A stretch of DNA of 64,000 nt from Asterias rubens (Eukaryota): contig NW_022985711.1 of NCBI RefSeq assembly GCF_902459465.1, forward strand, positions 124,001 through 188,000, read 5' to 3'. Positions 2,316 to 62,000 of the stretch are shown here, in pieces. Position 1 is the stretch's first letter; the number at the start of each line of letters is the position of its first letter. The position numbers and the translations under genes were made by a program. Below the pieces are notes generated by a model, which was not told the DNA's origin, searched no databases, and saw only the letters and a program-made list of their open reading frames with translations.

Positions 2316-7216
<4,901 letters not shown>

Positions 7217-9520: not shown

Positions 9521-24645
<15,125 letters not shown>

Positions 24646-41000: not shown

Positions 41001-44000
41001 TACATTGCCATGGGTCTCCGGCTGTCAGTGCCCTGCAGGTATGACCAAGGCCCAAATTCATGGATCTGCTTACCAATGAATTCTAAGCTTATACAGTAAC
41101 CACTTTCTGCTTACTTTGCAAGTGCCACATTTCTGTACTAGCCGTGTAATCAAAGAATGTGGAGCAACACTCAGTTCCAAACGAAAATTCCCTGCTAACC
41201 TGTGAATTATTCTTGACCTAAGCGCAGGATGCCAGGGGACCAATGGTAGAACCAGCTAGGGACCAATGGTAGAGCCAGGGGACCATCGGTAGAACCAGCT
41301 AGGGACCAGTGGTAGGGTCAGGGGACCAGTGGTACATGTAGAAGAACCAGGGGACGTGGTACAACCAGGCGGGAGGTTGTTTTAAAATGTTTGTCACTGT
41401 GAATGCTATCATGCTGCTCACAATATACCTGGCCCCTAACTATTGCCCCTCATTCGTCAGAGGCTTAGTCTCGCACAGAGCAGCAGCAGTCTCCTATGAG
41501 AGTGTATTGGCGAGGGATCCGTTATGCTATCACCAAAATAAACATTTAACGACTTGTCTACAAGTCTATTTCAACACTTGGATTTGAAGCTTATTATGTC
41601 TCTGGAAACATCTTAGATCATGAACCTTTGGTGTTGATTTAAATTCAGGCACTCTGGAGGAAGGAGATGTTTGTGTTGAAAAGGAAAGCTGCTCTTGTGA
41701 CCAGTATGGTGAAGTCTACCCATCTGGTTCTCTGATAGAGGAAGACTGCGAAGTTTGGTAAGTGGGTACCTGCAAGTTCCAGTGCCAAATTTCAAAGAGC
41801 TGCTTAAGCATTAACAACTAGCTAAGGAGGCCTGGGCGAATTATTCGAATATCCGGTTAATGGCGAATAGGTTTTCCTATCCGTAACCCCGAATGCCTTT
41901 TTTTTCTTAACCGGATATCAAAGATTACGAAAGTTTTCCTTCACGTAGAGTCAATCACGATCAAAAGAAAAAGCAAATCGCCATCTTTAAATTAGATCCG
42001 GTTATTTTTATGAATGAACCAAGTGACACTGTCTAAAACTAATATCAATCCGCCCATAAGATCAATTTTTAATATTTTTATTTATTTTTAATAGCGCCCT
42101 CTAGCGGCAAAAAAACTATTCCAATATCCGGTTAATTTCGGATAGTTGGCCAGCGGTATCCGAATACGAAAATTTCAATATTCGCCCAGCACTATAGCTA
42201 AGCACAACAAAGCACGTCACTGTACCAGACAACATTCAAATCTAATACGCAAATGGCTGATGAAATCTGAATACCTCAGACTATAGAAACAGGTGCTATG
42301 TCTCGTGATTCGGGGCAAGCTTTTGCATAGTTACATAAGAGCCGACAAACACCTGTGCACAATTCTGTATGAATATGTATGGCACTAGGGGTTGCTCATC
42401 TGGAGGTTGTTTTATAACAGATTGCCTCAAACTATTTGTATTTGACATGGAGGGATCGATTTCGTCCATTTTGCATAGCAAAATATTTAGACTGTGTGCA
42501 CAACTGACTGCTAATATTGTCATGGCTACATGGCAGTTGCAGGTTAGATGGCTTCCGACTGGCACCCCTGAACAAAAGTATCGACAAAGAAAGGCAGACT
42601 GCCAACATAGGACCAGATAGCTCAGTTGGTAGAGGGCTGGCCATTAATACGGAGGTTGTTGGTTCAACATGTTCAATGGCTTAAACCATGAAATGAAATT
42701 TAAGCGGTAACTTGTGACTAAGCTGGGCCCAATTTCATGGCTCTGCTTACCGTAAGCACAGAATCGGCGCTTACGGAAGCAGGGAATTCTGTGCTTACGG
42801 CAAGCGTATTTCAAGGGTTAGCAGCGAATTTTGGCTTCTGCGTGTGCGTACTCCACGTTACTAGGCATTCTACGCCTACAAGGCTAGCGCAGAAATTCGG
42901 CGCTTGCACGTAAGCGGGGAATCGTGATCGTAAGCGCAGAATTCGGCGGTAAGCAGAACCAGGAAATTGGGCCCTGGTCATTGTACCACACATTATTGGA
43001 CCCTGCTTGAAAAGAGAGTTTGTTGAAACTTTGCATGGTGAGCGTACAATTAGATTAAATTATGCATTAGCACAGGTGTAAATCTCTATCGAGTAGTGTT
43101 GGTTCCGAGAAGAACTGGGTGGATGACAACTCAACACTTCAATCAGTTTGCTCTGATCGTCTTCAGGAGGACGGTTAGTTGTCAACCACCTCTCAGAATC
43201 ATCACTACTCAAAAGAGATTCTCACATGGTGCTACATTAAAACCTAACCTAGAAGTAAGTTGTATTAAAGGTTTGTCATGCTGCCTCCATCTTGGTCATG
43301 TTCCTCGTATCAAATAACAATAATGAATGCCAGTAATTATTTTGCAAATAGGAACCAGACTATTTTGTTCTTCCAGCCTCGGTGTGGTAACATTGATAGA
43401 AATTGGGGAAATTCACGATGGCGGCACCATGATAAAGGTCTATTGAAGGTTTATATAACAATCTCAATTCTTCTTTCTTTTTCTTGTTGAAACAGTGTCT
43501 GTATGGAAGGCATGCTTGACCAATGCACTCCCAAGATACCCTGCCATGCAGCCTGTACCATACTAGGCGGCCGCTATTTCAACTCGTTTGACGGGCTGAA
43601 CTTTGAGTTTGAAGGCAACTGCGAGTATGTGCTTGCCCAGAACGCCACCTCTGAAGTTCCAAAGTTTGTTGTCTTTTTGGACCAAAGCAATTGCGAAGGA
43701 AACAGAATAGTTTGCATGCCTTTCATTAGTCTCCTTGTGCCAGATGGAACCATATATGAGTAAGGATGGATATTGTTTTAACCCCCCCCCCCCCCCCCCC
43801 CAGGTCCTCTCCTTGTCTCCTTCTTCATTGTTCATCCCTGGCGTGCCGAGTGGATAAGGGCGTGGTACTCAAGCTCTGGACCCAATTTCATAGAGATGCT
43901 AAGCACAAAAATTTGCTTAGCATGAAATTTCTCCCTTGATAAAAACAGGATTACCAACCAAATTTCCTCGTGATTTTCAGGATAATCAAACAACAGCTGA

Positions 44001-47000
44001 ATACCAGTAACGAGCAATACGCGACAAATGGGAAGTTAGTTAGTAATCCTGTTTTTATCAAGGAAGAAATTTCATGCTAAGCAAATTTGTGTGCTTAGCA
44101 GCTCTATGAAATTGGGCCCTGGTGTTTCTGATCAGCAAAGTCTTGGTTCGATTCTAAGTCATGACACTTGTGTACTAGCAAGACACTTGACCAATTCAAA
44201 TTTTTAGTGCTAACTTGGGATAAAACATGTCATTGTACCAGACAATTGTAAAATCTTACACGCAAATGGCTTATTGTTGTGAATGATGTGGGTTAGTTCA
44301 AGGCCTGTAATACACTATTGTTACTGTTGTTGTTTTTGTTGTTTGTTTGTTGTGAAACAGAGTCAAGGTTGCTGATGAGCTGATAGTCTACGGAGTCAAC
44401 CAACCGAAACAGAATATGAGACTTCCTTATAAAAAGATTGATGGAGACAGCTCTATTATAGTGAAACGTCTCTCTTCGATGGTTTGCCAGATGAGGTTAC
44501 CTACACTTGGCATACAGATTCTGTGGGGAAACGACAATCGCATTTACATCATAGCTGAAGATAAACTACTTGGCAAGGTCAGATTATGTTTTATCTTAAA
44601 AGATGAATTTACTAGAGTAGGATTTTAATCTGCTTGCGCTGGTTTAACGTACCGGCGCTCAAACAATTGAGCTATGTTGCCCAAATGTTGATTTCATGCT
44701 GCCTACCGGGGATCGTGTATCCGTCGTCAGAGACTTCACCCCAGCTTTGAATTGCCCGTCAGGAGTCGATAAAGCGCTTGGTAAGAACTGCGTATTATTA
44801 TTTTTATTTTTATTAGTATTATGATTCACTCTTGTGGTTAAAACTACAGATCAACGGTCTGTGTGGAAACTACAACAAAATACAGTCCGATGATTTCACC
44901 CTGCCTACCGGGGATCGAGTATCCGTCGTCCGCGACTTCACTCCAGCATGGAGTTCAGATTACACGTGTAAAGAGAAACCTTCGGATTCGCTGCTCAACT
45001 TCTGTGAATTGTACTCATTAGTTGACGCAGAGACTAACGCAATCTGTGGTTTACTAAAAGGTAAGATATAACATTGAATTCAACCATCAGGGCCCAAGTT
45101 CATTAAAGACACTGGACACTATTGGTAATTGTCAAAGTCTAGCCTTCACAGTTGGTGTATCTCAACATATGCATGCAATGACAAGCCTGTGAAAATTTGA
45201 GCTCAATCGGTCGTCGAAGTTGCGAGATACTAGTTAAAGAAAAAAGAAAAAACCTTGTCACACTGGTGTTTTTTTTTTCTTTAACAGGAAGTTGTGTGCT
45301 TTCAGATGCTTGATTTGGAGACCTCAAATTCTAAACCTCAAATTCGTGGAAAATTACTTCGTTAATTCAGAGGGAAGTTCAATGTTTTATACTATCAACA
45401 GCTCCCCATTACTCGTTACCATGAAAAGGTTTTATGCTAACAATTGTTTTGAGTAATTACCAATAGTGTCCACCGCCTTTCAGCCTGTAAAAAAAAAATC
45501 ACCAACTCACTGGCATGTTGTGGCCAGTGTCTTTAAAGTTCTAGTGTCTTTAAGGTCGTTAATTTTTGTGTCTGTTCTTTTTTTGTAAAGCGCATCCATT
45601 CAGTAAGTGCAACTCGAGAGTGGACATGACTAAGTACCACAAACAGTGCAAAATGGATCGCTGTATTCACTCCGAGGGGGCAGAGTGTTTGGCCATGTCT
45701 GCCTATGCCCAGGAGTGCTCTAGAAAGGGGATTGTGATTGAGTGGAGGACTCCAGAACTCTGTCGTAAGTTATATGCCTCTTTCTTCTAAAGTCGTCCTC
45801 TTGGGTGGATTTCACAAAGAGTCAGGACTAGTCTTATCTCGAGTTAGGACGAGTTACTTAGGACTACTCTTAAAGGGTATGGGTACTTTTTGCAAAATTT
45901 TCACATATTTACATTAAATTAAACAAAATATTACTTGCTGAGGTGCTGTAGTTTTTGAGAAATGAGTAAAACAATGTCACAAAAATTATTTTAGTCATAC
46001 CGTGCTGGTTAATACGTTTTCTACATGCAAAATAATTTTTAAATCACTAACAGCTCTGGCCTTGTATTACTCATTTCTACTACTATCGCATCAGTAGACA
46101 GTTCAACTTCTGTAACACGTTCGCTGCGAAAACAGCTTGTGTCAAAATTCGCTTCGCATTCTCATTCGCAGGAAGTATGAACAGGGCTTAACTCTTCTTT
46201 CTCCAGAAGACGATCAGAGCATACTGATCAAAACGTCGAGTTGAAACCAACTGTTCTTTTCAGAACCACCTCAACTCATTAGAGATAGTCATTACATATC
46301 ATATTAAGGGTGCGTTCGATAACACTAGCGTCCCTGGGTCTACCTTGCGGTGCTTACTCGGGTAAGCCCCTGACAACAGCTATAACGAGCGATCCCTCAC
46401 CGCTCTTGTAGTGACGCCATGTACCTGGGGCCAGCCCCCAAGTGACCCTCAACAAGCAGGGCACTGGGGGCTGACCTGGGTGAGCCCCTGGAATGACGTC
46501 AAAGCTATTCGAACGCACCAGGGGCAGACCGGGGTCGACCCAGGGAAGCTAAACGAACGCACCCTAACTCTTGTTATTTTCTTTATGCAGATGTGCCCTG
46601 TTTCTTGGGTCAGGTTTACAAGGAGTGTGGGTCATCATGCAAGGTATCCTGTCTTGATCTCAGCAATACTGATTGCAAAGAACGCTGCATTCAGGGATGT
46701 CAGTGTCCTGACGGTGAGGTAAGTTCAACATATAGAGCTTTGTATGCCATAGAGTTATATATAAGAACTAGAGGGCGCATTGATATTTAACTAATACTGA
46801 TTGCAAAGAGCACTGCGTTCAGGGTTGTCAGTGCCCTGGCGGTGAGGTAAGTTCAACATATAGAGCTTTGTATGCCATAGAGTTATATATAAGAACTAGA
46901 GGGCGCACTGATATAAAACTAATACTGATTGCAAAGAGCACTGCATTCAGGGATGTCAGTGCCCTGGCGGTGAGGTAAGTTCCACATATAGAGCTTTGCA

Positions 47001-50000
47001 TGCTATAGAGTTAATATAAGAACTAGAGGGCGCATTGATATATAACTAATACTGATTGCAAAGAGCACTGCATTCAGGGTTGTCAGTGCCCTGGCGGTGA
47101 GGTAAGTTCCACATATAGAGCTTTGTATGCTATAGAGTTAATATAAGAACTAGAGGGCGCACTGATATAAAACTAATACTGATTGCAAAGAGCACTGCAT
47201 TCAGGGATGTCAGTGCCCTGGCGGTGAGGTAAGTTCCACATATAGAGCTTTGTATGCCATAGAGTTAATATAAGAACTAGAGGGCGCATTGATATTTAAC
47301 TAATACTGAATGCAAAGAGCACTGCATTCAGGGATGTCAGTGCCCTGGCGGTGAGGTAAGTTCCACATATAGAGCTTTGTATGCCATAGAGTTATATATA
47401 AGAACTAGAGGGCGCATTGATATATAACTAATACTGATTGCAAAGAGCACTGCATTCAGGGTTGTCAGTGCCCTGGCGGTGAGGTAAGTTCAACATATAG
47501 AGCTTTGCATGCCATAGAGTTATATATAAGAACTAGAGGGCGCATTGATATATAACTAATACTGATTGCAAAGAGCACTGCATTCAGGGTTGTCAGTGCC
47601 CTGGCGGTGAGGTAAGTTCAACATATAGAGCTTTGCATGCTATAGAGTTAATATAAGAACTAGAGGGCCAACAAGCCTACATACGTACGCGTCCCGGCAT
47701 GTGCGTCCCATATCCAACTCAGCCTTCAGCCTCGTTGGACATGGGATGCAGAAGTGCTATATTTTTCCGTATTCCACTCACGCATGGTGTTAACTTGTAA
47801 TATTTTCGTTTCGGTGCACTAACCCTTTAATATGTTTTTAAAAAAATGATATTTAGGTCCTTGACGATGAAACAGAGAAATGTGTCAAAGTGGCAGATTG
47901 TTCCTGTCAGTTTGAAGGTCACGATTTCTCGCACGGACAAAAGTGGAACAGTGACTGCAATGATTGGTAAGTGAGGGCTCGAAATTTACACTGGATCATT
48001 TATTTTAGTTTCCCCAACTGGGAGGCCGAAAGGAAAATAAAATGCTCCAAGGATCACCTCGGGGGTTGTGGTTTTAACCAAAAGCAGATTGTAGACTAAC
48101 CTCCGTCATTAGCCTACGATACAAAAAGAAAAAAACTAGTTGAAGATTGCGAGTTGGGGCAGAGGATAGTTAATCTGTGGTTTCTTTTGTGGCTGATGCA
48201 GAGAAATAACCGCGATCTCAGACTTGAAATCAAGTCTAAGCAGGTTGAATTTCATTACATTGTAGGTCAAAAGTTTCATAAGGTCAATGATAATAGACTT
48301 TACCAAAAAATTGTTTTCTTATTTCCTTTCAGTGTTTGTTTAAATGGTGTTGCCAACTGCACGGATAAAATCTGTACCAGTAAGTTAACCTTTTGTTTTT
48401 GTTTTGTTTTTTGGGGGGGGGGGGATGGAGCTTGGGAGGGAGTATGTTCGTTCGGCTCCACTGGTCTTTTCCAAGACTGCTCGGACAGTCCAATGAGCTC
48501 AAACTGCGTAATGCGATTGTATAAACATGAAACTGAATCCAATTATTAAAATAATTTTATTTCAGGTGCAAATCAGGATTGCCCAATGAACCAAGAGTAC
48601 ATTGACTGTGTACACTGTGAGCGTAAATGTGAGAATATTCATTTGGCATGTCGAAGGATTTCGTGTACCCCCGGATGTGGGTGTCCAGACGGCATGGTAC
48701 GCATTGGAAACGATCAGTGTATGCCGCAGTCGCAGTGTCCATGTTACTTTAACGGACAATCGTACGGTTCCGGTGACGTATTCTTCAATGGATGCAGAAC
48801 ATGGTAACTATGTTTTTTTATTTCATTTTATGAGGTAACATCCAACTCACGAGGTTGGATAGCCACTTTAAGATGAGGGCTACATTTAACTGATTTGGGC
48901 TATCGATCCAGATCAACTGTCAACAGGGGCACATTACCATGTACTCCTGGGGCTGAAACAGGGTTACCCCCTCTACAGCTTGTAAGGATGTAGGCATGGG
49001 TATCATCCACTAGGAGCCACCAACTCCTGGGGCTGAAACAGGGTTGCCCCCTTCACAGTCTGTTAGGATGTAGGCATGGGTATCATCCACTAGGAGCCAC
49101 CTACTCCTGGGTAACCTCCTGGGGCTGAAACAGGGTTACTCACTTCGCAGTTTGTAAGGATGTAGGCATGGGTATCATCCACTAGGAGCTTGGCTGGTAG
49201 AGCAGAGTGCACTACATTTCCAACTTTTTCAAAGCAATTATGGTTAAGTGTCTTGCTCAAGGGTGTCTCTCAACCAGGATTCAAACCTTGGAGCTTGGGT
49301 CCGGTGATCTAGACTGCTTGGCCATGACACGCTATCATGGATAAGATTTAAGAGGGGCTCCAAAGTCAAACTAAGTTTTTGGACGCACTCAATTTCCACT
49401 AACTAGAGTCCCAATGAAGGTCTTCAACCTCATGTCAAAAGCAGGGTACACTTTTGTTTATTGTCAAAGACCAGTGTCCTCACTTGGTGTAAATCCAACA
49501 TAAGCATAAAACAAAAGTTTGGCTCAATTAATCACTGAAATTGCATTTTGAACGGGTTTGTTGTGTTTTTTGTTTTCAGTACATGTGGTGAATCAGGTGT
49601 TTATACTTGTGACGACAAATCTTGTGGAGGTAAGTGAATTTGTTTTTAATTTTAAGGTAGGATTTGGAGAAAGGGTTCCCTTTGAGGTAATATGGTTTTG
49701 ATAATTTGATTCAGTTTACTCGCAAGTGACTTTTAAAGTTACACTATACTTTCACTCGCCAAAAATCATTGAACAATTTAACACAGGTCTATTTGATACA
49801 AGGCAGGAGTTTCAACTTTGATGGCCATTTTCATTTTGAAAAGGTTGCTTCTATTGAAACCATTTGCAGGGATACAGGAATATTTTTAAAGAAGATCAAG
49901 GTATAGACTAGGGGCATTGTTAGCTTGCCAGCCCGCAGATCCTCATACGCTGTGTCAAAAAACAGCAGCGACTCCCAAAAAAAACCTTCCAGCGGCTTTT

Positions 50001-53000
50001 ATAATTTTATCTATGTGATCATTTGCTCTCTTTCGAACATGTTGCAAAGAGCTCTTCTGATGGAAAATCTTAAAGTTCATACTTTGAAAGGGCATCAAAG
50101 GTCAATAGACCTATCCCATGAAATATGTAAATTGCACATGACGCGTGCGCACTAATGTTTTGGTTGGCAAAATGAGTGAACATCGCGCTGTTTTGTACAC
50201 GGCTAATGGCTGCGTGACGCAGACGCCATTGTGCGTCTGCTAAGTGCACAACTCTATGGCGTTTGCCAACCAACAGGGTCTGTACGCATGTGTGAATGCA
50301 ATTAGCATTATTCATAGGAAGGATCCATTGTCCTTATTGATGCCAGGGGTGTGTCCACAACTCGTTCCACTTTTACTTGTTGGCGAACGTGCGCAACTGT
50401 TGGCAATGTTTGCGCGAGTGGAACGCACACCAGGCCTGGTGTTGCACAATCTCCCAGCTCATTAAGATTGACACCCATTTGTTATATAGGATTTGAGGCA
50501 TTGCATGGTGAGGTATTAATATTCACTTGGTTTGCGGTAACACCTTGTGTGTGTCTTCTTGCCAGGTAGAGTTTGTTCTGTCTTTCTTTATTCTACTACA
50601 GCGGAGTAGATTTATTGGGCATTCTGGAGACTTCTCAGTTCTGAAAAGAACAGTCCTACATGTACTTGTTAACTACTACCCATGCAGAAGGTATAGAAAA
50701 TTGGCTGGGACTACTACTTCAGCATATAGGATCATAATTATCTGCACTACCGCGGAGTCAGTTCTTGAATTGGTCTCACCGTTTCGACGAGCTTACTCTA
50801 TTCATCGTCATTTGTTATTAATGCAAATTTATTTGATCTTTTCCCCAGGCACATGCAGGGCTTATGGTGACCCTCACTACATCACATTTGATGGTCTAAA
50901 GTATGAATTCCAAGGTTAGTCACTCAAACTGAAATCTTTTGATGTTTTTTCTGCGGCAAAAAAAAAGAGGAAACAGCTTCTCAGGAGGCTCTTTGCAAAG
51001 TCTTAAATATTTTATATGACAAATGCGAGTTTCAAACTCCCATGCATTTTTCAAACTTGCGCTTAATGCCTCCTACCAACTTAAGTATGGTTGTAAAAAT
51101 CATCCGACAGCGCCCCCCTTGTGACACAATAAGGTCACATGTAGGTCATGTTTAAACACTTCTGTTTGTATATCGCACGTTTATATGGTCATGTGATCTC
51201 TTCTCGACCATCAAAATAATGTGACTCATCCCCATCTTTTAAAATCCTTAAAGGCAGTGGACACTATTGGTAATTACTCAAAATAATTATTAGCATAAAA
51301 CCTTTCTTGGTGACGAGTAATGGGGAGAGGTTGATGGTATAAAACATTGTGAGAAACGGCTCCCTCTGAAGTGCCATAGTTTTCGAGAAAGAAGTAATTT
51401 TCCACGAATTTGATTTCGAGACGTCAGATTTCGAACTTGAGGTGTCGAAATCAACCATCTAAACGCACACAACTTCGTGTGACAAGGGTTTTTTTCTTTC
51501 ATTATTATCTCGCAAGTTCGATGACCGATTGAGCTCACATTTTCACAGGGTTGTTATTTTATGCATATGTTGAGATACACCAACTGTGAAGGCTAGTCTT
51601 TGACAATTACCAATAGTGTCTACTGTCTTTAATCATTTTTGTTTTCTAAGTGGTTTTTATAATTGTATTTTCAGTTTTATGTGTTGCTTTTTAACTAACT
51701 GTGTTCCTTTGTTTTTGTTAAGCGCTTTGAGGCCTACATTTGTAGCTTAAGATGCTATATAAATACCCTTTTAATATTCTTTGCCCCGATAAAATTTCCA
51801 TATACTGCCTCTAGCTACTGGGCAATCTCGGTGGTCAAGTTGGTAAGACACTGCTCTAGAAATGCAAAGAGTTGTGGGTTGGAATACCACCCGAATATTA
51901 TTCCTGTGATTTGTTTTCACAGAGCTTGGGAAAATACCGAGTACATGTACATGTATACAGTGATAACACACATCGGTGTACATGGGTAAAACCAAAATTA
52001 ATATTCTTTATTCCCGTTGCAAATTTATATCTGTTATTATTGTTATTATTATTATTACTAAATAGTTGTTAAATTTGCATCGTGGATAAAGAATATTCAT
52101 TTCGGTTTTTACCCATTTACACCGATGTGTGTTAGCACTGTACACATGTACTCAGTACTTACCCGAGTTCTTTGAGATAAAATCACAGGCATATTACTCA
52201 GGTGGGAATTAAACCTAGAGCAGTGTCACATTGGTATATACGAGTAAAAACCTAAATGATGATGATTATTATTATTAGGAGAGTGCAGTTATACCTTGGT
52301 GACGGACAGATGTCAAGCTGACAGCGTTGCAACGATAGCAGTCCAGGTCGAGAATGTACCTTGCGGAACGGAGAAGCTGACTTGCACCAAGTCGATCTCA
52401 ATCTCCATCAAAGATGCCGTCATTACGCTGGTACGGGGTTCAGAACCAGTAGAGAGTAATCCAGGATCTACAGAAGCCAAATATCAATTCTTTAACTCTG
52501 GAATTTACCTCATTATTCATACACTGAACGGTAAGGATCTATTCTGTTTGAAAAGTTAAAATACAAGTAATGGAAAGTACAAGATCTTTTATCTGAACTT
52601 ACCTTGGATATAGAGTCCCGGTCATGACACTTGTGCCCTTGAGCAAGACACTTAACCATATGGGTACCTGTGAGGGCAGAGTTGGTTCTTGTGATTGGTT
52701 AGCTTAGTGCGTTACATATTTGGCAGCACAGGCTGTATACTCCCCAGGGAGCTGAGATGGTTTAAGGAATGATTTAAGGCCCAGTGACCAGGGGTAATAA
52801 TGTTGAAGCCCCATGAGCGTCACTGCGTGACAAACCTGAGCGCTATATAAGAAGCCACTATTATTATAAGCAAAACGATTAAAATATTATTTAAAATCGT
52901 AGATTAAAGGCAGTGGACACTATTGGTAATTACTCAAAAAAATTATTAGTGTAAAACCTTTCTTGGTGACGAGTAATGGGGAGAGGTTGATGGTATAAAA

Positions 53001-56000
53001 CATTGTGAGAAACGGCTCCCTCTGAAGTGCCATAGTTTTCGAGAAAAAAGTAATTTTCCACGAATTTGATTTCGAGACCTCAAGTTTAGAACTTGAGGTC
53101 TCGAAATCAACTATCTAAACGCACACAGCTTCGTGTGACATGGGTGTTTTTTTTCTTTCATTATTATCTCGCAAGTTCGATGACTGATTGAGCTCAAATT
53201 TTCACAGGTTTGTTATTTTATGCATATGTTGATATACACCAACTGTGAAGGCTAGTCTTTGACAATTACCAATAGTGTCCACTGCCTTTAAGAAATACGT
53301 TTTTTATTTCTCAACAGGAATTCGTATAACATGGGACAGAGGAACGTCTGTTTTCATAAACCTGGACGATTCGTACAAAGGGAGAGTGTGTGGAATGTGT
53401 GGTAACTTCGACGGCGACTCCGGAAATGATTTCAAAACAATTGGAGGAGAGTTCCAGGCTACTCCGAGGTTGTTCGGACACGAATGGAAGACGGATTCTA
53501 ACTGCGTGGTTCCACCGGAGCCGGTTCATCCATGTGAGACGGAAGTTGGTTTGACACGGAAGGCGTGGGCGGAATACTCATGTGACATTATCAAAGGGGA
53601 GATCTTTAAATCGTGTCACAATGTGGTAATGTAAACCCTTCTTGATGTTTACACAACTAAATAATAATAATGATTATAATAAAGTCTTTTAATGCACACA
53701 TATCCATCCAAGGTGTTTAAAGGCAGTGGACACTATTGGTAATTACTCAAAATAATTACTAGCATAAAACCTTACTTGGTAACGAGTAATGGGGGAGAGG
53801 TTGATAGTATAAAACATTGTGAGAAACGACTCCCTCTGAAGTAACGTAGATTTCGCGAAAGAAGTAATTTTCCACGAATTTGATGTGTGTTTTTTCTTTC
53901 ATTATTATCTCGCAACTTCGACGACCAATTGAGCTCAAATTTCCACAGGTTTAATATTTTATGCATATATATGTTGAGATACACCAAGTGAGACGACTGG
54001 TCTTCGACAATTACCAATAGTGTCCAGGGTCTTTAAGGGGCAGTTAAACCAAAAATAAAATGAAAGAAAACAGACACAACAAAATTATTCCTCGAATACC
54101 TGTGACAGTTTTGAGAAAAGATTTGCATTTTATGGTACAGAGACTAGATTAGAAAACACAGTGCAAGTCTTAACTCAGCGGAGCATTTCAGAGCAATGGC
54201 CTGGAGCTCTGGTATTTCTGATCAGCAGAGTGCTTCTTTTGCATACTCACAGCACGTACTGCTCAAAATTTGGAGGACCACACCAGCTCTTTTCAAAGCC
54301 AACACTCTACTGAAGAGATTTTACACGAGGTTTTACTCACAAGTTTACTATTTTTATTTTATCTTATTTTCCACACCATGCAAAGCTTCAAACACCATCT
54401 AGGTTCCTCTTAGTTTAAGAAGAACACTTATTGTGCGCCGGTACCCCTCACAAGTGATGTTCATGGCGCAAGGAGGGCCTCTTTGGGTTTTGAGGGCCTC
54501 TTTGAACTTATGAATAGAAGAAATTTTAACGGGTATTTAGAGGCAGATTATTCCAAAGTAGAGGACAAGCCTCTGAGAAAAAGCTCTGTCACCCCAATTG
54601 TTGTAGGTTTTGGGAACAACCAGTAATGAAGAAGTGGATTTAGCAGACGATTCTAAAAATCTTTCCTTTGTTGTTGCTCAGATCGACCCCCAGGACTACT
54701 ACGATAGCTGTGTGTATGATAGCTGCGGATGCGACAGGGGTGGAGACTGTGAATGTTATTGTACAGTCGTCGCTAACTATGCTGCTGTTTGCAATGAGAT
54801 GGGTGTTGCCATACAATGGCGTTCACCTGGTGTTTGTGGTAAGTCTAAATTTCTAATGATAATGGTAGACTTCACAACCTGGGCCCTGTTTCATAGAGCT
54901 GCTCAGCACAAAAATTTGCTTAGCATGAAATTTCTTCCTTGATAAAAACAGGATTACCAACCAAATTTCCACATGATTTTCAGGGTAAGCAAACAACGGC
55001 TGAATTTGCAACAAATGGAAATTGGGTTGATAATCCTGTTTTGCTTTCAAGGAAGAAATTTCATGCTAAGCAAATTTTTGTGCTTAGTAGCTCTTTGAAA
55101 TTGTGTCCAGGTTGCTAGTGGCAAATGAGGTTCTGGAAAGAGGCATTGGGGGGGTTGCTTAACTTTTTTGTTGGACAAGTTATCAAGTAATTATTGATGG
55201 GCTTCTTATTAGACCTTAGTTGACTGTGAGAAATTTAATGAAGGTTATCATTCTTATCTACATGTATAAGAAGAAACTAGAAATAAATGGTAAACTTGCG
55301 GGTATAACCATGTGTAAATCTCTTAGGATGAGTGTTGGCTCTGAAAAGAGCCGGTTGGGTCTCGCCATTTCGAACGGTATACTCTGCTTGTCTCACCTTA
55401 AGAGATTTACACATGATTGTACCCGCAAGTTTACTAGTTATTCTCCACACCATGCAAAGCTTCAAACAATACTTATTCTTTTGCTTTCCATTAATAAAGC
55501 TATGCAATGCGTGAACGACATGACATACAAAACGTGCGGTGAAGTTTGCGCTGATAGGGTCTTTTCTGATCAGGCCGCACCAAGCTTCAATTGCCATCAG
55601 GTTTGTATCGATGGGTGTCACTGTCCAGAAGACACCAAACTCTGGCGGGGTGTGTGTGTACCGGAGGTCAACTGTACCCACAATGGCACTGAGTACATAC
55701 CAGGCAACCATGTTGATCTTGAAGAATGTACAAACTGGTAAGTAACCCTCACCAAACACTGAGGTTTTCCTTTCCACCCCCTTTAAAGGCAGTGGACACT
55801 AATGGTAACTACTCAAAACAATTGTTACAATAAAAACTCACTTGGTAACAAGCAACACAGAGCTGTTGATTGTATAGAACATTGTGAGAAGCGGCTCCCT
55901 CTGATGTAACTTTGTTTTGGAGAAAGAAGTAATTTTCCATGAATTTGAATCTAAGACCTCAGAATTAGATTTTGAGGTCCGGAGATCAAGCACCTGAAAG

Positions 56001-59000
56001 CACTTTGTGTGTGACAAGGGTGTTTTTTCTTTCATTATTATCTCCCAACTTCGACGCCAATTGAGCTCAAATTTCCACAATTTGTTTTTTATGCATTTGT
56101 TGAGACACACGAAGTGAGAAGACTGGTCTTTGACAATAACCAACAGTGTCCAGTGTTTTCAAATGAAAAAATAAAAGTTAATTGCGGCAATCAAAAGAAA
56201 ATCTTGTTGGTGGTCTTCAAACCCATTTGACTGAAATATTTCTGAAACAATAGTTAATGGCCTAATGTTTCAACTCTGCTATACACCTTCCCTTTAAACT
56301 GGTATGTATTGCGGTGTATATGGGTAAAAATCTAAACGATATTCTTTATCCCCGATGCAAACTTAACATCTATTAAATCGTTTACAGTACCCGCTGCAAA
56401 AACATAGGATTCCAGCTGCCCACCTTGGTGGTCTAGTTGGTATGACACTGTCATGTTTTTTTTTTCAACAGAACTCTGGTAAATACTGAGTATACAGTGC
56501 TAACACACATCAGTGTACATGTATATGGGTAAAAACCAAACAAATATTCTTTATCCCGATGCAAATTTAATATCTATTAATTTGTTTTGTTTTCTTTTTA
56601 GTACTTGTCAAAATGGAGAGCTCACCTGTGTTCCTTTACCAAGCTGCGCAAGTAAGTATAACTCAAATATTATTTAGCGCCTAATTAATAAAATTGTTGT
56701 GTTATGTTTTATAAAAACCAATGGCTTATTTTATGAGCTTAGATGTTTCAATTTATTGCCAAAAAATTTTCCCTTTCCTCGTTTCTGTCAGCAAAGACTA
56801 AATTCAACAACTTGTTGTTACTTTCAATGATTTTGTTATTGTCACAAGCCTTAGGCTTTTAAGTAAGTTTTTTAATTTTGTCCCCATTTTTTTTTTAACC
56901 CAGCTACTACAGCAAATGTGACTACTGTAGTGAGTACAGCAGTGCCATCGACCACCACCAATGGGACAACTACAGGTAAAATTTAGTAATAGTCAAATTC
57001 AGCAGCCAGCAATCCCTGAAAGATCTTGCAGGGTGCACTCCCAAGATGCAGGGGGAGGGGGGAGGGTGTCCGGGGGCAGGTCCGCTTAGGCTCAAATGCG
57101 CCTTGCACACGGGGCCTCAGATTCCAGCAGCGGAGGGATTACCATAAGGGGATGCAACTTTTTATTTCAAATATCATGTAACATTACAGGAAAGCTCCAT
57201 TAAAGAATGAGACTGGAAAGAAACATCCTTTTCATCTGACAACTCACACCTGTTATCTCCATGTTATTCCTTTTTCAAACGGTGGACTTAATCCGATCAT
57301 GCACAAACCAGTAGGGCTGCCAACTGCCCAAGGTTTAATGACCAAAGAAACACAATGTAAACACACCAACTGGTGACACTGGTTTCTGAGCTTTTATGGC
57401 AACACTCAAACAATTCAATGGAGCTTTCCATTGATAAGTCACAAGAGAAACTAACTGGGTACAACTTAAATAATTCAGGTTTAAACAAAGACAAACTTAC
57501 AAGAGCAGGACTTGAACCAGTGACCACTGGCTTAACAAGCCTGTGCTCTACCAATCGGGCTATCTAAACCCTAGTATTACACTGTAGTGTCCCTATTTTG
57601 TCAATACCGTTGTCAATTTAAACTCTGCTTTAAGCTTAGTTGGCAGAGTGCTACAGGTAGCTTGTTTATCAAGTGGTCGCAAGTTCATGTCCGGCTTTTT
57701 TTTAATTCAAACTTGTCACAATTATGATTTTGCTTTTTTGCAAATGCTTTTACAGCAACTCCAACTAGTACTGAAGTTACAACCACTCAGGTAACATCCA
57801 CAACAGCTGGTTCAACTGAACAAACCACTACCACAGTTGTGACAACTTCTCCCGAGGCAACCACCACAGAGATAACCACTGTGGAGATAAGTTCAGGTAA
57901 GTACATGTATTTATATTTGGTTTGCCGTAACACCATGTGTGTATCTACTTGCCAGGTAGAGTTTGTTAGAGAACTGTCTTTCTTTATTCTACTACCGTGG
58001 AGTAGATTTATCAGATGTTCGGGAGACTTCTCAGTTCTGAAAAGAACTGTCCTGCAAGTACAGGTAAGTACGAAGGAATGATCTTTAGTGTTACTTTTCC
58101 AACCTTACTCTGGGTGTTTCAGACAATTTGCTGATTCTTTCTGTATGAATTGTTTCCTTAATTATGTGTTTGTATTTGTTGATTTGATGCAGGGCCACCC
58201 ACAACATCAGTTACGACTGCTGGACCAACAACTACAGAGGTATCGACCACTACGACTAATGTCACTACCCTATCGGTACCATCAACTACAGCTGCAGCTA
58301 CAACCTCGGCTGTGCCTACAACAACTGAAGTGGTCACCACAACTACTTTAGTTTTGACCACCACTCCAGAAGCAACAACCTCTGAGGAGACAACTGTTGT
58401 GACTACCAGCCCGGTGTCTACAACCACTGGTAAATATAAAAATGATTACAATTTTAACCTGTTATTGTGAATTAAACGAATTGCTAGGCTTAGCTGCTTT
58501 TTGCTGATCGTTTGCCTTCTTCTTAGGCCTGCTGACAAGTACTCAAGTTTCAACCCTATATTTGGGTTCAGTAACAAGTATACAAATTTAAAAAAAAAGC
58601 TTTGCGCTTTTAACTCGTTAAACTTTTGTTTTTATCTGTTTGTTTTCTAGGTACGACTTTAGCACCCTGTTTGGATAACCTGGATGACGCAGTTGAGGTC
58701 CACAGAATCAATATGGATGAATTTGCAGAAGTTTCCTCGGATTACTGGTGGATATCATTGAACCCCCCACAAAATGAGAGTACACCATACACTGGTTCCT
58801 CATTGGTTACCACTTTCAACCCCACTGTCAAGTTGGTTGCAATAAAGGTTGAGAAAAAGGAAGATGTGGTCGAAGACATCAAATTTTCCCTCACTGGAAA
58901 GTCTAATCGTGGAGACACAGCGTTTACACCAATAGAAAATGCTGATGGTGGAGCCATATTTACTGGCAAAACATACAGCTACATTTTTTTACCTAACGAC

Positions 59001-62000
59001 TTGGGACCTATAGCTTTACTGTCGCTCCGAATCATTCAACCAACTCCAACCTCCGAGTACAGAGTGAAGTTCTTTGGATGTGCAGGTAAAGAAATTCACA
59101 GTGTTTCTTTTTATGAATAAATTTGAGGCGACAAAAGGAATTATTTTTGACCTCTCAATGTTTAACATTTCTCTTGACTTCAATATCAACAGCTTTGCCA
59201 TCTACAACTGCAGCAACAACAGAGAAAGTAACCACAACAGTTGTGACAACTTCTCCTGAAGCAACCACCACAGAGATAACCACTGTGGAGATAACTTCAG
59301 GTAAGTGCAAAAGAGTGATCGTTGTTGGTACTTTTCCATCGTTACTCTTGGTATTTCAGACAAATTGCTGGTTCTTTCTTTTTGATTTGTTTCCTTAATT
59401 ATGTGTTTGTATTTGTTGATTTGATGCAGGGCCAGCCACAACATCAGTTACGACAGCTGGACCAACAACTACACAAGCATCAACAACTACCACAAATGTC
59501 ACTACAGTATCGGTTCCATCAACTACAGCTGCAGCTACAACCTCGGCTGTACCCACAACAACTGAAGTGGTCACAACAACTAGTGCTGTTTTGACTACCA
59601 CTCCTACAGGAACAACCTCTGAGGAGACAACTGTTGTGACTACCAGCCCAGTGTCAACTACCACTGGTAAAATTTCCTTTCATAATTGTTCTCCTACTTC
59701 AAACTCTCATTTTGCATTACTGTCTAAATTAAAGATATGAAAACATTTGGCATTATTTCTTCAAAAAAATGTCATAAGCTTACTAAATATATGTCTAGAA
59801 ATCTTTTGTTAACCATTAAATTCCTTCACACAGGACAAGCAACAAGTACTGAAGTTTCAACCAGTAGTGTAACAACTACCTCAGCTGGTACCACTACTGC
59901 AGGTCCAACTTCAACTGAACAAACCACTACCACAGTTGTGACATCTTCTCCTGAGGCAACCACCACAGAGATAACCACTGTGGAGATAACTTCAGGTCAG
60001 TACAAAAGAATGGTCTTGAGTTTTACTGTTTTTAAAACCTTTCTCAGGGGGGTGTTTCAGCAAAATTGTTGTTTGTTTCTTTTTTATTTGTTTGCTTAAT
60101 TATGTGTTTGTATTTGTTGATTTGATGCAGGGCCAGCCACAACATCAGTTACGACAGCTGGACCAACAACTACACAAGCATCAACAACTACGACAAATGT
60201 CACTACAGTATCGGTTCCATCAACTACAGCTGCAGCTACAACCTCGGCTGTGCCCACAACAACTGAAGTGGTCACAACAACTAGTGCTGTTTTGACTACC
60301 ACTCCTACAGGAACAACCTCTGAGGAGACAACTGTTGTGACTACCAGCCCAGTGTCAACTACCACTGGTAAAATTTCCTTTCATAATTGTTCTCCTACTT
60401 CAAACTCTCATTTTGCATTACTGTCTAAAGTGAAGATATGAAAACATTTGGCGTTGTTTCTTCAAAAAAATGTCATAAGCTTACTAAATATATGTCTAGA
60501 AATCTTTTGTTAACCATTAAATTCCTTCACACAGGACAAGCAACAAGTACTGAAGTTTCAACCAGTAGTGTAACAACTACCTCAGCTGGTACAACTACTG
60601 CAGGTCCAACTTCAACTGAACAAACCAGTACCACGGTTGTGACATCTTCTCCTGAGGCAACCACCACAGAGATAACCACTGTGGAGATAACTTCAGGTCA
60701 GTACAAAAAGAATGGTCTTGAATTTACTTTTCCAACCTTGCTCAGGGGGGTGTTCCAGACAAACTGCTGATTCGTTCTTTTTTATTTGTTTGCTTAATTA
60801 TGTGTTTGTATTTGTTGATTTGATGCAGGGCCAGCCACAACATCAGTTACGACAGCTGGACCAACAACTACACAAGCATCGACAACTACGACAAATGTCA
60901 CTACAGTATCGGTTCCATCAACTACAGCTGCAGCTACAACCTCGGCTGTGCCTACAACAACTGAAGTGGTCACAACAACTAGTGCTGTTTCGACTATCAC
61001 TCCTACAGGAACAACCTCTGAGGAGACAACTGTTGTGACTACCAGCCAAGTGTCAACTACCACTGGTAAATTTGTTTTTTGAGAAAGAAGTTTTGGTCAG
61101 AAAAATACTTAAAAAAAAACAATTATCTGTTAGATTGAACCATACAAATTTGTAGGCTCAGCTGCTGTACCTTAAATTCTTTGTTTAAATATGCTTCCTT
61201 CACAGGAGTGCCGACAAGTACTGAAGTTTCAACCACTAGTGTAACAACCACCGCAGCTAGTACAACTTCTGCAGGTCAAAATTATTTCCTTATTACTACT
61301 GTTGTCTTTTTGTTGTCATTTTGGGCAGTGAAGATTTGAAATTTAGGCAAACACTTTTTCTTAATTAGGTACTGTTATTACATGTTAATTTCGAAAAATT
61401 GTTTATCCTTGATGTATAACTTTGTTGGTGTGTGACATTTTCATGTTTGAATTTCCAATACAAACATTAAATTGATTAAAATTCTTAAATTCATATTTTC
61501 CTTTATTTTCTAGGTACGACTTCAGCACCATGTTTGGACAACCTGGATGATGTAGTTAAAGTCGAACGAATAAATTTGGATGACTTTTCCGAGTTGTCTG
61601 CTGATGATTGGTCGATACCATCAAACCCCCCACAAGATGAGAGTACACCATATACTGGTTCCTCATTGGTTACTACATTCGAGCCCAATGTCAAATTGGT
61701 TGCAATAATGGTTGAGAAAAAAGGCGATGTGGTCGAAGACATTAAATTTTCCCTCACTGGAAAGTCTAATCGTGGAGACACAGCGTTTACACCAATAGAA
61801 AATGCTGATGGTGGAGCCATATTTACTGGCAAAACATACAGCTACATTTTTTTACCTAACGACTTGGGACCTATAGCTTTACTGTCGCTCCGAATCATTC
61901 AACCAACTCCAACCTCCGAGTACAGAGTGAAGTTCTTTGGATGTGCAGGTAAAGAAATTCACAGTGTTTCTTTTTATGAATAAATTTGAGGCGACAAAAG

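What the first reader, a model, noticed from the sequence alone, without database searches (positions are those of the whole stretch)
58651..61948. Degenerate discoidin (F5/8C)-like domain punctuates the mucin repeats where vertebrates use CysD
A single-exon domain of about 140 aa is bracketed by two cysteines (APC...FFGC). By eye it follows the F5/8C strand pattern but is highly diverged and acidic at its N-terminus. It recurs once per 2863-bp unit between Thr-rich tracts. A D1-D2-D'-D3 head followed by periodically spaced lectin-like or adhesive modules suggests a mucus or adhesive polymer with built-in non-covalent cross-linkers. Discoidin domains are known in hemolectin, SCO-spondin and Sfp1, but I do not recognise this periodic arrangement or this sequence family.
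Basis: partly seen in the sequence, partly recalled or inferred. Interest (0 to 1): 0.7.

Follow-up and report, generated by a model that had tools for sequence, protein, structure and literature searches.

The report
Hidden discoidin domain in sea-star mucin
A sea-star gel-forming mucin gene carries, between its sugar-coated threonine-rich stretches, a repeated 145-residue module that folds like a discoidin (F5/8 type C) binding domain but has diverged so far that standard domain databases miss it; this is a new variant of a known invertebrate mucin design, not a new kind of protein.

Summary
Observation confirmed. A 435-nt phase 1-1 exon at 58651-59085 recurs at 61514-61948, and again 2863 bp further on, past the window. 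Each copy encodes about 145 aa bracketed by two cysteines, between Thr-rich exons of a gene with a VWD-C8-TIL x3 head. The contig ends 3.6 kb beyond the window, so the copy number is unknown.

AlphaFold2 on a 21-sequence family alignment gives pLDDT 93.7. Two independent structure searches rank only F5/8C discoidin domains at the top (DDR1 Z 12.2, neuropilin b1, CASPR2, FV/FVIII C2), ahead of CBM32. Pfam does not detect it in any of 21 members. A profile-profile comparison is weak (P 0.005) but lines up with the canonical motifs.

The domain is real: dN/dS is 0.30, spliced RNA contigs contain it, it has a Patiria miniata homologue, and two paralogous arrays on contig C16 hold at least 10 and 12 copies. 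One of those paralogs is a complete gel-forming mucin with a cystine-knot end.

The "in place of CysD" idea is only partly right. This genome has canonical CysD, including one inside that paralog. F5/8C domains in invertebrate VWD mucins are already described (hemolectin; Lang et al. 2016).

Verdict: new variant of a known kind. The binding or cross-linking role is inferred, not shown.

The parts
58651..59085 (+). Discoidin-like domain exon, copy 1 (435 nt, phase 1-1; Cys6...Cys143)
   Evidence: Sequence and translation. AF2 pLDDT 93.7. F5/8C fold matches. An X2 contig joins 58863-59082 to 59190-59266, and an X1 metatranscriptome contig covers 58961-59082.
61514..61948 (+). Discoidin-like domain exon, copy 2 (88% aa identity to copy 1; all differences lie in the first 228 nt)
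   Evidence: (D8). dN/dS against copy 1 is 0.30.
59193..59300 (+). PTS exon A (36 codons), directly after the domain exon
   Evidence: Splice consensus. RNA joint 59297>59427 with GT..AG ends. Open spliced frame.
59430..59666 (+). PTS exon B (79 codons), first of three B-type copies per unit (the others at 60131-60367 and 60829-61065)
   Evidence: Repeat family D1. RNA joint 59665>59833 with GT..AG ends, 35 reads in X10 plus X1 and X2 contigs..
59834..59995 (+). PTS exon C (54 codons); second copy at 60535-60696
   Evidence: (D6).
61206..61274 (+). Short PTS exon E (23 codons), directly before domain copy 2
   Evidence: Splice consensus. Keeps the 549-codon unit open.
57728..58427 (+). First PTS exons after the head (bounds are those of the open frames; Thr-rich)
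36359..41076 (+). D1 assembly: VWD (36359-36646), VWD end plus C8 (38975-39460), TIL (40888-41076); bounds are those of the open frames
   Evidence: Pfam VWD, C8 and TIL.
43491..46787 (+). D2 assembly: VWD (43491-43760), C8 (45563-45787), TIL (46497-46787)
48550..48804 (+). D' (extra TIL plus a following Cys-rich segment)
   Evidence: Pfam TIL.
52278..55738 (+). D3 assembly: VWD (about 52278-53631), C8 (54607-54939), TIL (within 55220-55738)
   Evidence: VWD hits at C41:176278 and C41:177242.

Best explanation
The window holds the 5' two-thirds of a secreted gel-forming mucin gene of a sea star (probably Asterias rubens).

Shown:
- An N-terminal D1-D2-D'-D3 head (VWD-C8-TIL x3 plus an extra TIL) is followed by Thr-rich PTS exons.
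- A symmetric phase 1-1 exon is inserted every 2863 bp. It encodes a 145-aa all-beta module with the discoidin (F5/8 type C) jelly-roll fold.
- The chain ends of that module carry the one invariant cysteine pair.
- The module belongs to a small family with no Pfam match at the thresholds used. It is found in at least two other mucin genes of this genome and in Patiria miniata, and it is under purifying selection.

Inferred:
- The head multimerises by disulfides, as in VWF and MUC2.
- A cystine-knot C-terminus dimerises. It is missing from this contig. It is probably the CTCK-like exon next to a 92-93% identical PTS array on C16.
- The O-glycosylated PTS stretches form the bottle-brush.
- The folded, unglycosylated discoidin-like modules act as regularly spaced binding nodes. 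Discoidin and CBM32 domains bind ligands through loops at one end of the barrel. Here the most conserved motif (WW.P.NPP..PY.GS) lies in the longest loop and aligns with the canonical ligand-loop Trp region.
- The most likely ligands are glycans (the polymer's own or neighbouring ones) or matrix or surface molecules. Either would give reversible cross-links or adhesion within the mucus or adhesive gel.
For: Exon, repeat and frame.

Head domains.

Fold:
- AF2 pLDDT 93.7, pTM 0.86.
- Foldseek against the PDB puts FVIII C2, DDR2, neuropilin b1 and lactadherin C2 on top.
- AFDB clusters give F5/8C proteins.
- In VIA-align over 48,161 chains the first 18 rows are all F5/8C: DDR1 Z 12.2 (rmsd 3.1, 132 aa), NRP1 b1 11.9, CASPR2 11.9, FV C2 11.7. 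CBM32 scores 10.1 or less.
- The C16 paralog gives the same ranking (pLDDT 94.2; DDR1 Z 12.4).
- The structural alignments run from the first Cys to the last.

Weak sequence support:
- hhalign against seven canonical discoidins of the same genome gives P 0.005 over 113 columns, in the canonical motif register.
- The nearest named clusters by language-model features are F5_F8_type_C and CBM32.

The family is real: 18 non-spurious hits among 1.84 billion representatives, including XP_038045133 'mucin-2-like' of Patiria miniata. dN/dS is 0.30. Spliced RNA contains the exon.

Paralogs: C16:12.48-12.565 Mb has a VWD/C8/TIL head, PTS, at least 12 modules, a CysD and a CTCK. C16:11.53-11.553 Mb has at least 10 modules and a CTCK.

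Probable 3' end of this gene: its 700-bp PTS sub-repeat recurs at 92-93% identity at C16:12585585-12592017(-), followed by a CTCK-like exon at 12582704-12582973(-).
Against: - No Pfam F5_F8_type_C hit in any of 21 members even at E <= 10.
- The profile against PDB sequences finds FVIII C2 only at E 1.4.
- The hhalign probability is only 7%. Descent from metazoan F5/8C therefore rests mainly on predicted structure.
- No ligand, glycan binding or self-association is shown. The homodimer prediction gave no verdict.
- Only three copies are assembled, and the later units are 94-100% identical in 200-nt windows.
- In the one RNA run with signal, the domain exon and exon A have depth about 1, against about 45 for PTS exons B and C. 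The B and C reads carry fixed differences from this copy. Most expressed PTS repeats therefore come from other copies, and the domain-to-PTS ratio in the mature protein is unknown.
- The tissue of expression is unknown.
Confidence: 0.7

Rival explanations
1. Passive spacer. The module is only a folded, protease-resistant, unglycosylated 'knot'. It breaks up the PTS brush, for folding, packing in granules or stiffness, and has no ligand-binding role.
For: Only two cysteines and no canonical discoidin motifs detectable by Pfam. No dimer signal (which is no verdict). Strands are slightly more conserved than loops overall (mean 0.49 against 0.44).
Against: The best conserved motif of the family (WW.P.NPP..PY.GS) sits in a long irregular loop (residues 28-50) and not in the core. 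Such loop conservation at about 30% overall identity usually marks an interaction surface. Known F5/8C and CBM32 domains are binding modules (established knowledge).
Confidence: 0.2
2. Another branch of the galactose-binding-domain-like superfamily (CBM32-like, SUN-, PITH- or DOC-like, or an independent origin), and not a descendant of the metazoan F5/8C domain of ancestral hemolectin-type mucins.
For: Sequence methods do not link it significantly to PF00754. CBM32, IFT25, PITH, SUN and APC10 also match with Z 8.4-10.1.
Against: Metazoan F5/8C domains fill the first 16-18 ranks in two models, 1-2 Z units above CBM32. The terminal Cys pair and full-length coverage match metazoan discoidins. The hhalign register follows the canonical motifs. 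F5/8C is the domain known to sit after D3 in invertebrate VWD mucin-like proteins (PMC4948705).
Confidence: 0.1
3. The gene is a tube-foot adhesive footprint protein and not an epithelial mucus mucin. It could be the unresolved Sfp12 (Thr-rich repetitive, no annotated domain) and/or Sfp13 (vWD plus vWC, partial) of Asterias rubens. This concerns where it acts and is compatible with the best explanation.
For: PMC9382459 states that Sfp10, Sfp12 and Sfp13 map only with low identity to unplaced scaffolds in poorly assembled regions. It describes Sfp12a-c as Thr-rich repetitive with no annotated domain, and Sfp13 as having vWD and vWC domains. This gene is on an unplaced 191.6-kb scaffold, with a VWD head and Thr-rich repeats.
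Against: No sequence comparison was possible: the supplements are not held and no named Sfp protein was found. Other unplaced scaffolds also carry VWD exons (C30, C28, C68). The tissue of the RNA runs is coded.
Confidence: 0.25
4. Artefact: a pseudo-exon or an assembly-made repeat that has no place in any protein.
For: The later units are 94-100% identical in 200-nt windows and the contig ends inside the array. RNA depth over the domain exon is low.
Against: The 549-codon spliced unit is open. dN/dS is 0.30 across the diverged part. A spliced contig joins the domain exon to the next PTS exon. There are 30-35% identical paralogs in long arrays and a Patiria homologue. The fold prediction is confident.
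Confidence: 0.03

Closest known systems
Hemolectin/hemocytin and other invertebrate VWD-C8-TIL mucin-like proteins with F5_F8_type_C domains (Lang et al. 2016, PMC4948705)
   Same: [quoted passage not shown] PTS is present. In some phyla CysD lies next to the F5/8C domains, as in the C16 paralog here.
   Different: [quoted passage not shown] Here the domain has no Pfam match at E <= 10 and is amplified as a cassette with PTS (3 copies seen here, at least 10-12 in the paralogs). In the complete paralog no further VWD was found among the scored candidates between the array and the CTCK.
Vertebrate MUC2/MUC5AC/MUC5B with CysD (Mucin2_WxxW) interrupting the PTS
   Same: D1-D2-D'-D3 head, long PTS, a small folded non-PTS module recurring inside the PTS, and a cystine-knot end (in the paralog, and probably in this gene).
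   Different: CysD is a domain of about 100 aa with many cysteines and a WxxW motif. This module has 145 aa, two cysteines and a discoidin jelly-roll fold. CysD also exists in this genome and in the paralog.
Metazoan discoidin domains of DDR1/2, neuropilin b1/b2, CASPR2, factor V/VIII C1/C2, lactadherin
   Same: Fold, size, and the terminal cysteines aligned at both ends (Z 10.6-12.4, 120-139 aligned residues).
   Different: Only 9-20% identity. The canonical motifs are not detected by Pfam. The context is a mucin PTS region, not a receptor or a clotting factor.
Sea star footprint proteins Sfp1, Sfp2, Sfp10, Sfp11 (Asterias rubens; PMC9382459)
   Same: Secreted sea-star proteins that combine vWD/C8/TIL and/or FA58C or lectin domains. 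They are proposed to work through protein-glycan interactions.
   Different: Their FA58C domains are canonical and annotated, and they are not PTS mucins. A link to Sfp12 or Sfp13 is only a lead.

Membership tests
F5/8 type C (discoidin) domain, Pfam PF00754 | Match to the family HMM above the gathering score | tested here: not met
   No PF00754 hit at E <= 10 for the two window copies or for any of the 21 family members. The family profile against PDB sequences finds FVIII C2 only at E 1.4.
F5/8 type C (discoidin) domain, Pfam PF00754 | Distorted beta-barrel or jelly-roll of about 150 aa, superposable on solved discoidins over the whole domain | tested here: met
   AF2 pLDDT 93.7 and 94.2. 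The top 18 VIA-align rows are all F5/8C: Z up to 12.2 and 12.4, rmsd about 3 A, 120-139 residues aligned. Foldseek PDB and AFDB agree. These are predicted structures, not solved ones.
F5/8 type C (discoidin) domain, Pfam PF00754 | Cysteine near the N-terminus and cysteine at the C-terminus (disulfide joining the chain ends in metazoan members) | tested here: met
   The C-terminal GC (G142, C143) is invariant. C6 is present in every member not truncated at its N-terminus. The structural alignments begin at residues 1-6 and end at residue 144 or later, opposite the terminal Cys positions of DDR1 and FV C2. The bond itself could not be measured.
F5/8 type C (discoidin) domain, Pfam PF00754 | Canonical sequence motifs (W-x-A/P, WLQVDLG, F-x-GN-x-D, ARYIRI-x-P, R-x-EL-x-GC) | tested here: inconclusive
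   hhalign against seven canonical discoidins of the same genome gives P 0.005, probability 7%, over 113 columns. Family motifs fall opposite each canonical motif but with different residues.
F5/8 type C (discoidin) domain, Pfam PF00754 | Ligand binding through loops ('spikes') at one end of the barrel | not testable with these tools
   The only indication is that the most conserved motif lies in the long loop at residues 28-50.
Gel-forming mucin | Three N-terminal VWD-C8-TIL units (D1, D2, D'D3) | tested here: met
   Pfam VWD, C8 and TIL on the exon open frames between 36359 and 55738. VWD hits on C41.
Gel-forming mucin | Long Pro/Thr/Ser-rich (PTS) region | tested here: met
   403 of the 549 codons per unit are PTS (T 43%, S 14%, P 6%). 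Splice joints are seen in RNA.
Gel-forming mucin | C-terminal cystine knot (CTCK) | tested here: inconclusive
   Not on this contig, which ends inside the array. A CTCK-like exon follows a 92-93% identical PTS array at C16:12582704-12592017. The feature is met in the paralog (Cys_knot and DAN hits).
CysD (Mucin2_WxxW, PF13330) | HMM match; many conserved cysteines and a WxxW motif | tested here: not met
   The module has two cysteines and no PF13330 hit. True CysD domains lie elsewhere in the genome.
Hemolectin-type '3+2' VWD protein | Two further VWD-C8-TIL units after the discoidin domains | tested here: inconclusive
   None is seen in the window. The complete C16 paralog has no VWD hit between its array and its CTCK, but only the best 150 candidates were scored. 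The 3' part of this gene is not assembled with it.

The most novel reading that the evidence does not exclude
Sea stars (perhaps echinoderms in general) evolved a lineage-specific discoidin subfamily with no detectable Pfam match. It is multiplied together with PTS cassettes and works as a built-in lectin that binds the polymer's own O-glycans. The result would be a self-cross-linking mucin. [quoted passage not shown]
Probability: 0.15. Interest if true: 0.7.

Novelty: new variant of a known kind. Interest (0 to 1): 0.5.

Why it matters
It adds a hidden member to the discoidin superfamily. It also bears on a published survey of gel-forming mucin evolution, which reports F5/8C in mucins of protostomes, hemichordates and cephalochordates and its loss in vertebrates, without naming echinoderms (PMC4948705). 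HMM-based surveys would have missed the sea-star version.

It shows a second way, besides CysD, of placing folded binding nodes at regular intervals in a mucin brush. Here that is done by amplifying a symmetric phase 1-1 exon cassette.

For work on sea-star mucus and temporary adhesion it offers a concrete candidate domain to express and test for glycan binding. It also offers a candidate genomic home for footprint proteins that could not be placed on the assembly.

Tried and rejected
- Pfam and PDB sequence searches with the single domain, with all 21 members and with the family profile found nothing significant. The best Pfam hits (DUF5370, PLAT, Big_5) were below threshold and inconsistent across members.
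- Four long bacterial repeat proteins in the HMMER search (YDG, cadherin-like, Big_5) were rejected as repeat-inflated chance hits.
- Homodimer prediction of the module scored 0.01: no verdict, neither for nor against.
- Tandem Repeats Finder missed the array because the period is above 500.
- Linking the gene to Sfp12/Sfp13 failed. The paper's supplements are not held, and a length-windowed search with a 246-aa profile returned 7 proteins, none named Sfp.
- A search for more copies in Patiria found one module per 23-kb locus.
- The first automatic splice joins for two canonical discoidins were wrong and were redone.
- The RNA run X11 showed no signal over the mucin exons. The high depth at 54868-56523 and 57812-58179 comes from dispersed repeats, not from this gene.


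Full report
**What is in the sequence**

Position 58651 follows an AG acceptor and position 59085 precedes a GT donor. The 435 nt between them translate in phase 1-1 to a 144-145 aa peptide that starts ...APC and ends ...FFGCA.

The same exon recurs at 61514-61948 with 88% protein identity. The spacing is 2863 bp (family D8). A third copy lies just beyond the window at C41:188379-188810. It differs from copy 2 by one nucleotide.

The window is C41:124001-188000, and contig C41 is only 191,607 bases long. The gene therefore runs off the contig 3.6 kb after the window, and the true number of copies is unknown.

Joining the predicted exons of one unit (D, A, B, C, B, C, B, E) gives an open frame of 549 codons. 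That is 145 aa of domain plus 403 aa with 43% Thr, 14% Ser and 6% Pro. All of these exons are symmetric phase 1-1 cassettes.

**The gene around it**

Open frames between 36359 and 55738 on the + strand match Pfam VWD, C8 and TIL three times each, plus one extra TIL between the second and third sets. This is the D1-D2-D'-D3 head of VWF and the gel-forming mucins.

**Is the domain real?**

Copy 1 and copy 2 differ at 40 nucleotides, all in the first 228 nt. dS is 0.22 and dN 0.066, so dN/dS is 0.30. From about 58880 onward the units are 94-100% identical in 200-nt windows, so copy 1 straddles the edge of a recently homogenised higher-order repeat.

The RNA evidence is as follows:
- A contig of run X2 joins 58863-59082 to 59190-59266, that is, the domain exon to the next PTS exon.
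- A metatranscriptome contig of run X1 covers 58961-59082 without a mismatch.
- Raw RNA reads of run X10 show GT..AG joints at 59297>59427 and 59665>59833.

Expression is low. The domain exon and exon A have depth about 1, while PTS exons B and C reach about 45. The B and C reads carry fixed differences from this copy. Most expressed PTS repeats therefore come from copies other than those assembled here, and the ratio of domain to PTS in the mature protein remains open.

**Relatives**

In the same genome the module recurs at 31-35% identity in two arrays on contig C16:
- at least 10 copies with a 1050-bp period at 11543250-11553065;
- at least 12 copies with a period of about 1169 bp at 12491532-12516523.

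A full HMMER scan of 1.84 billion representative proteins found only 22 hits. Four are bacterial repeat proteins that I reject as spurious. The other 18 are short, unannotated fragments. One of them is XP_038045133, 'mucin-2-like', of the bat star Patiria miniata.

The 21-sequence alignment A1 has an invariant C-terminal GC, a conserved N-terminal Cys, and the motifs WW.P.NPP, PY.GS.L..TF.P, TSV.V, IF.G.TG.KI.LP and Y.V.F.GC.

**Fold**

AlphaFold2 on A1 gives an all-beta model with mean pLDDT 93.7 and pTM 0.86.

- Foldseek against the PDB puts factor VIII C2, DDR2, neuropilin b1, lactadherin C2 and CBM32 on top (E about 1e-3, TM 0.55-0.62).
- Against AFDB clusters it finds F5/8 type C proteins.
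- VIA-align does not depend on Foldseek and compares all 48,161 representative chains. Its first 18 rows are all F5/8C domains: DDR1 Z 12.2 (rmsd 3.1 A, 132 residues), neuropilin-1 b1 11.9, CASPR2 11.9, DDR2 11.7, factor V C2 11.7, Discoidin I 11.2. CBM32 scores 10.1 or less, and IFT25, PITH, SUN and APC10 score about 8.4-9.5.
- The alignments span the model from the first cysteine to the last.
- A second model, of the C16 paralog, gives the same ranking (pLDDT 94.2; DDR1 Z 12.4). The two models share most of their alignment and are not independent.

Sequence evidence is weak:
- No member reaches Pfam PF00754 even at E <= 10.
- The family profile finds FVIII C2 in the PDB only at E 1.4.
- hhalign against seven canonical discoidins that I spliced from this genome gives P 0.005 and probability 7% over 113 columns. 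The register places each family motif opposite a canonical one: W.P; GS.L.TF opposite WLQVD; IF.G.TG opposite F.GN.D; VY.V.P opposite ARYIRI.P; F.GC opposite ELIGC.
- Language-model features also point to F5_F8_type_C and CBM32 clusters (scores 0.87-0.89, a lead only).

Formal Pfam membership is not met.

**Family architecture**

The C16:12.48-12.565 Mb gene, on the minus strand, is complete. It has, in order:
- VWD/C8/TIL exons at 12.565-12.535 Mb;
- a long PTS exon;
- Cys-rich exons;
- the module array;
- a cystine-knot exon at 12484142-12484456 (Cys_knot and DAN hits).

This is the evidence. The 11.54 Mb array is also followed by a vWC-like exon and a CTCK exon.

The 700-bp PTS sub-repeat of the gene studied here recurs, introns included, at 92-93% identity in at least nine tandem copies at C16:12585585-12592017(-). 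A CTCK-like exon follows at 12582704-12582973(-). I infer that the unplaced scaffold C41 belongs there and that this is the missing 3' end. I could not fetch that DNA to check.

**CysD**

The genome has canonical Mucin2_WxxW domains. Three or four lie beside a VWD cluster on C17 (12.37-12.40 Mb). One lies at C16:12498716-12498982(-), inside the paralog, between its tandem modules and its last, divergent module. The module therefore does not simply stand in for CysD; both occur together.

Lang et al. 2016 (PMC4948705) already describe two relevant points:
- F5_F8_type_C domains follow the three VWD-C8-TIL units in hemolectin and in many lophotrochozoan mucin-like proteins, with CysD inserted nearby.
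- F5/F8 is present in gel-forming mucins of Protostomia, Hemichordata and Cephalochordata and was lost in vertebrates. Echinoderms are not named.

The sea-star genes fit this old bilaterian plan. The differences are that the discoidin has drifted out of HMM range and has been amplified together with PTS.

**Mechanism**

The anatomy is shown. The mode of action is inferred from the families involved:
- disulfide multimerisation through D1-D3;
- dimerisation through the CTCK;
- an O-glycan brush on the PTS;
- the discoidin-like modules as unglycosylated binding nodes.

The most conserved motif lies in the long loop at residues 28-50. In the hhalign register it falls opposite the conserved Trp loop of canonical discoidins. 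This fits a retained binding surface but does not prove one. A homodimer prediction gave no verdict.

**A lead on identity**

Lengerer and colleagues (PMC9382459) could not place the footprint proteins Sfp10, Sfp12 and Sfp13 on chromosomes. Sfp12a-c are Thr-rich, repetitive and without annotated domains. Sfp13 has vWD and vWC domains. This gene, on an unplaced scaffold, is a candidate. No sequence was available for comparison, and other unplaced scaffolds also carry VWD exons.

**Verdict**

The fold interpretation is supported. The 'instead of CysD' and cross-linker ideas are only partly supported or untested. This is a new variant of a known kind, of moderate interest.

I did not verify it.

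Noticed in passing
window 46537-47729: A tandem array of nine or more 128-bp units, each repeating the 3' half of the TIL-2 exon (...TDCKEHCIQGCQCPGGEV) together with its donor site. It lies directly after the real exon and could offer decoy 5' splice sites. The scan also noted this as s1-150980.
   Followed up: partly
window 54868-56523 and 57812-58179: Intronic stretches with very high RNA depth (up to about 1100 per strand) in runs X10 and X11. The reads run on into unlike sequence and some join opposite strands. These are dispersed, transcribed repeats (transposon- or SINE-like), not exons of the mucin.
   Followed up: no
G000:C16:12484142-12484456(-) and C16:12800397-12800711(+): Two 96% identical cystine-knot exons about 316 kb apart in opposite orientation. 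This suggests an inverted duplicate of the paralogous mucin gene.
   Followed up: no
G000:C17:12374794-12401474(+): A separate VWD cluster followed by three or four canonical CysD (Mucin2_WxxW) exons. This is a MUC2/MUC5-like mucin with true CysD in the same genome.
   Followed up: no
G000:C22:256451-293944(-): A run of at least seven canonical F5/8C exon hits with a CysD hit at its downstream end. This is a canonical discoidin plus CysD protein; no VWD was seen among the scored hits.
   Followed up: no
G000:C16:573661-649147(-): A VWD cluster with a canonical F5/8C hit at 610883. This is a hemolectin- or Sfp1-like gene with a recognisable discoidin, on the same chromosome as the cryptic-discoidin mucins.
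   Followed up: no
window 4969-5998 (-): Exons of a small class-I methyltransferase with an NPPF motif (Pfam MTS, UPF0020, PrmA).
   Followed up: partly
window 10028-10261 (+): An exon matching the PCAF_N domain (E 7e-9). A GCN5/PCAF-type acetyltransferase gene lies upstream of the mucin.
   Followed up: partly
L057/L058 (Patiria miniata JADOBP010000029.1, 10.33 and 8.78 Mb): Two loci with an identical 246-aa 'mucin-2-like' model that carries one module. Each lies about 4-6 kb downstream of a 2001- or 2239-aa gene with VWC domains in the same orientation. The short models may be split-off ends of larger genes.
   Followed up: partly
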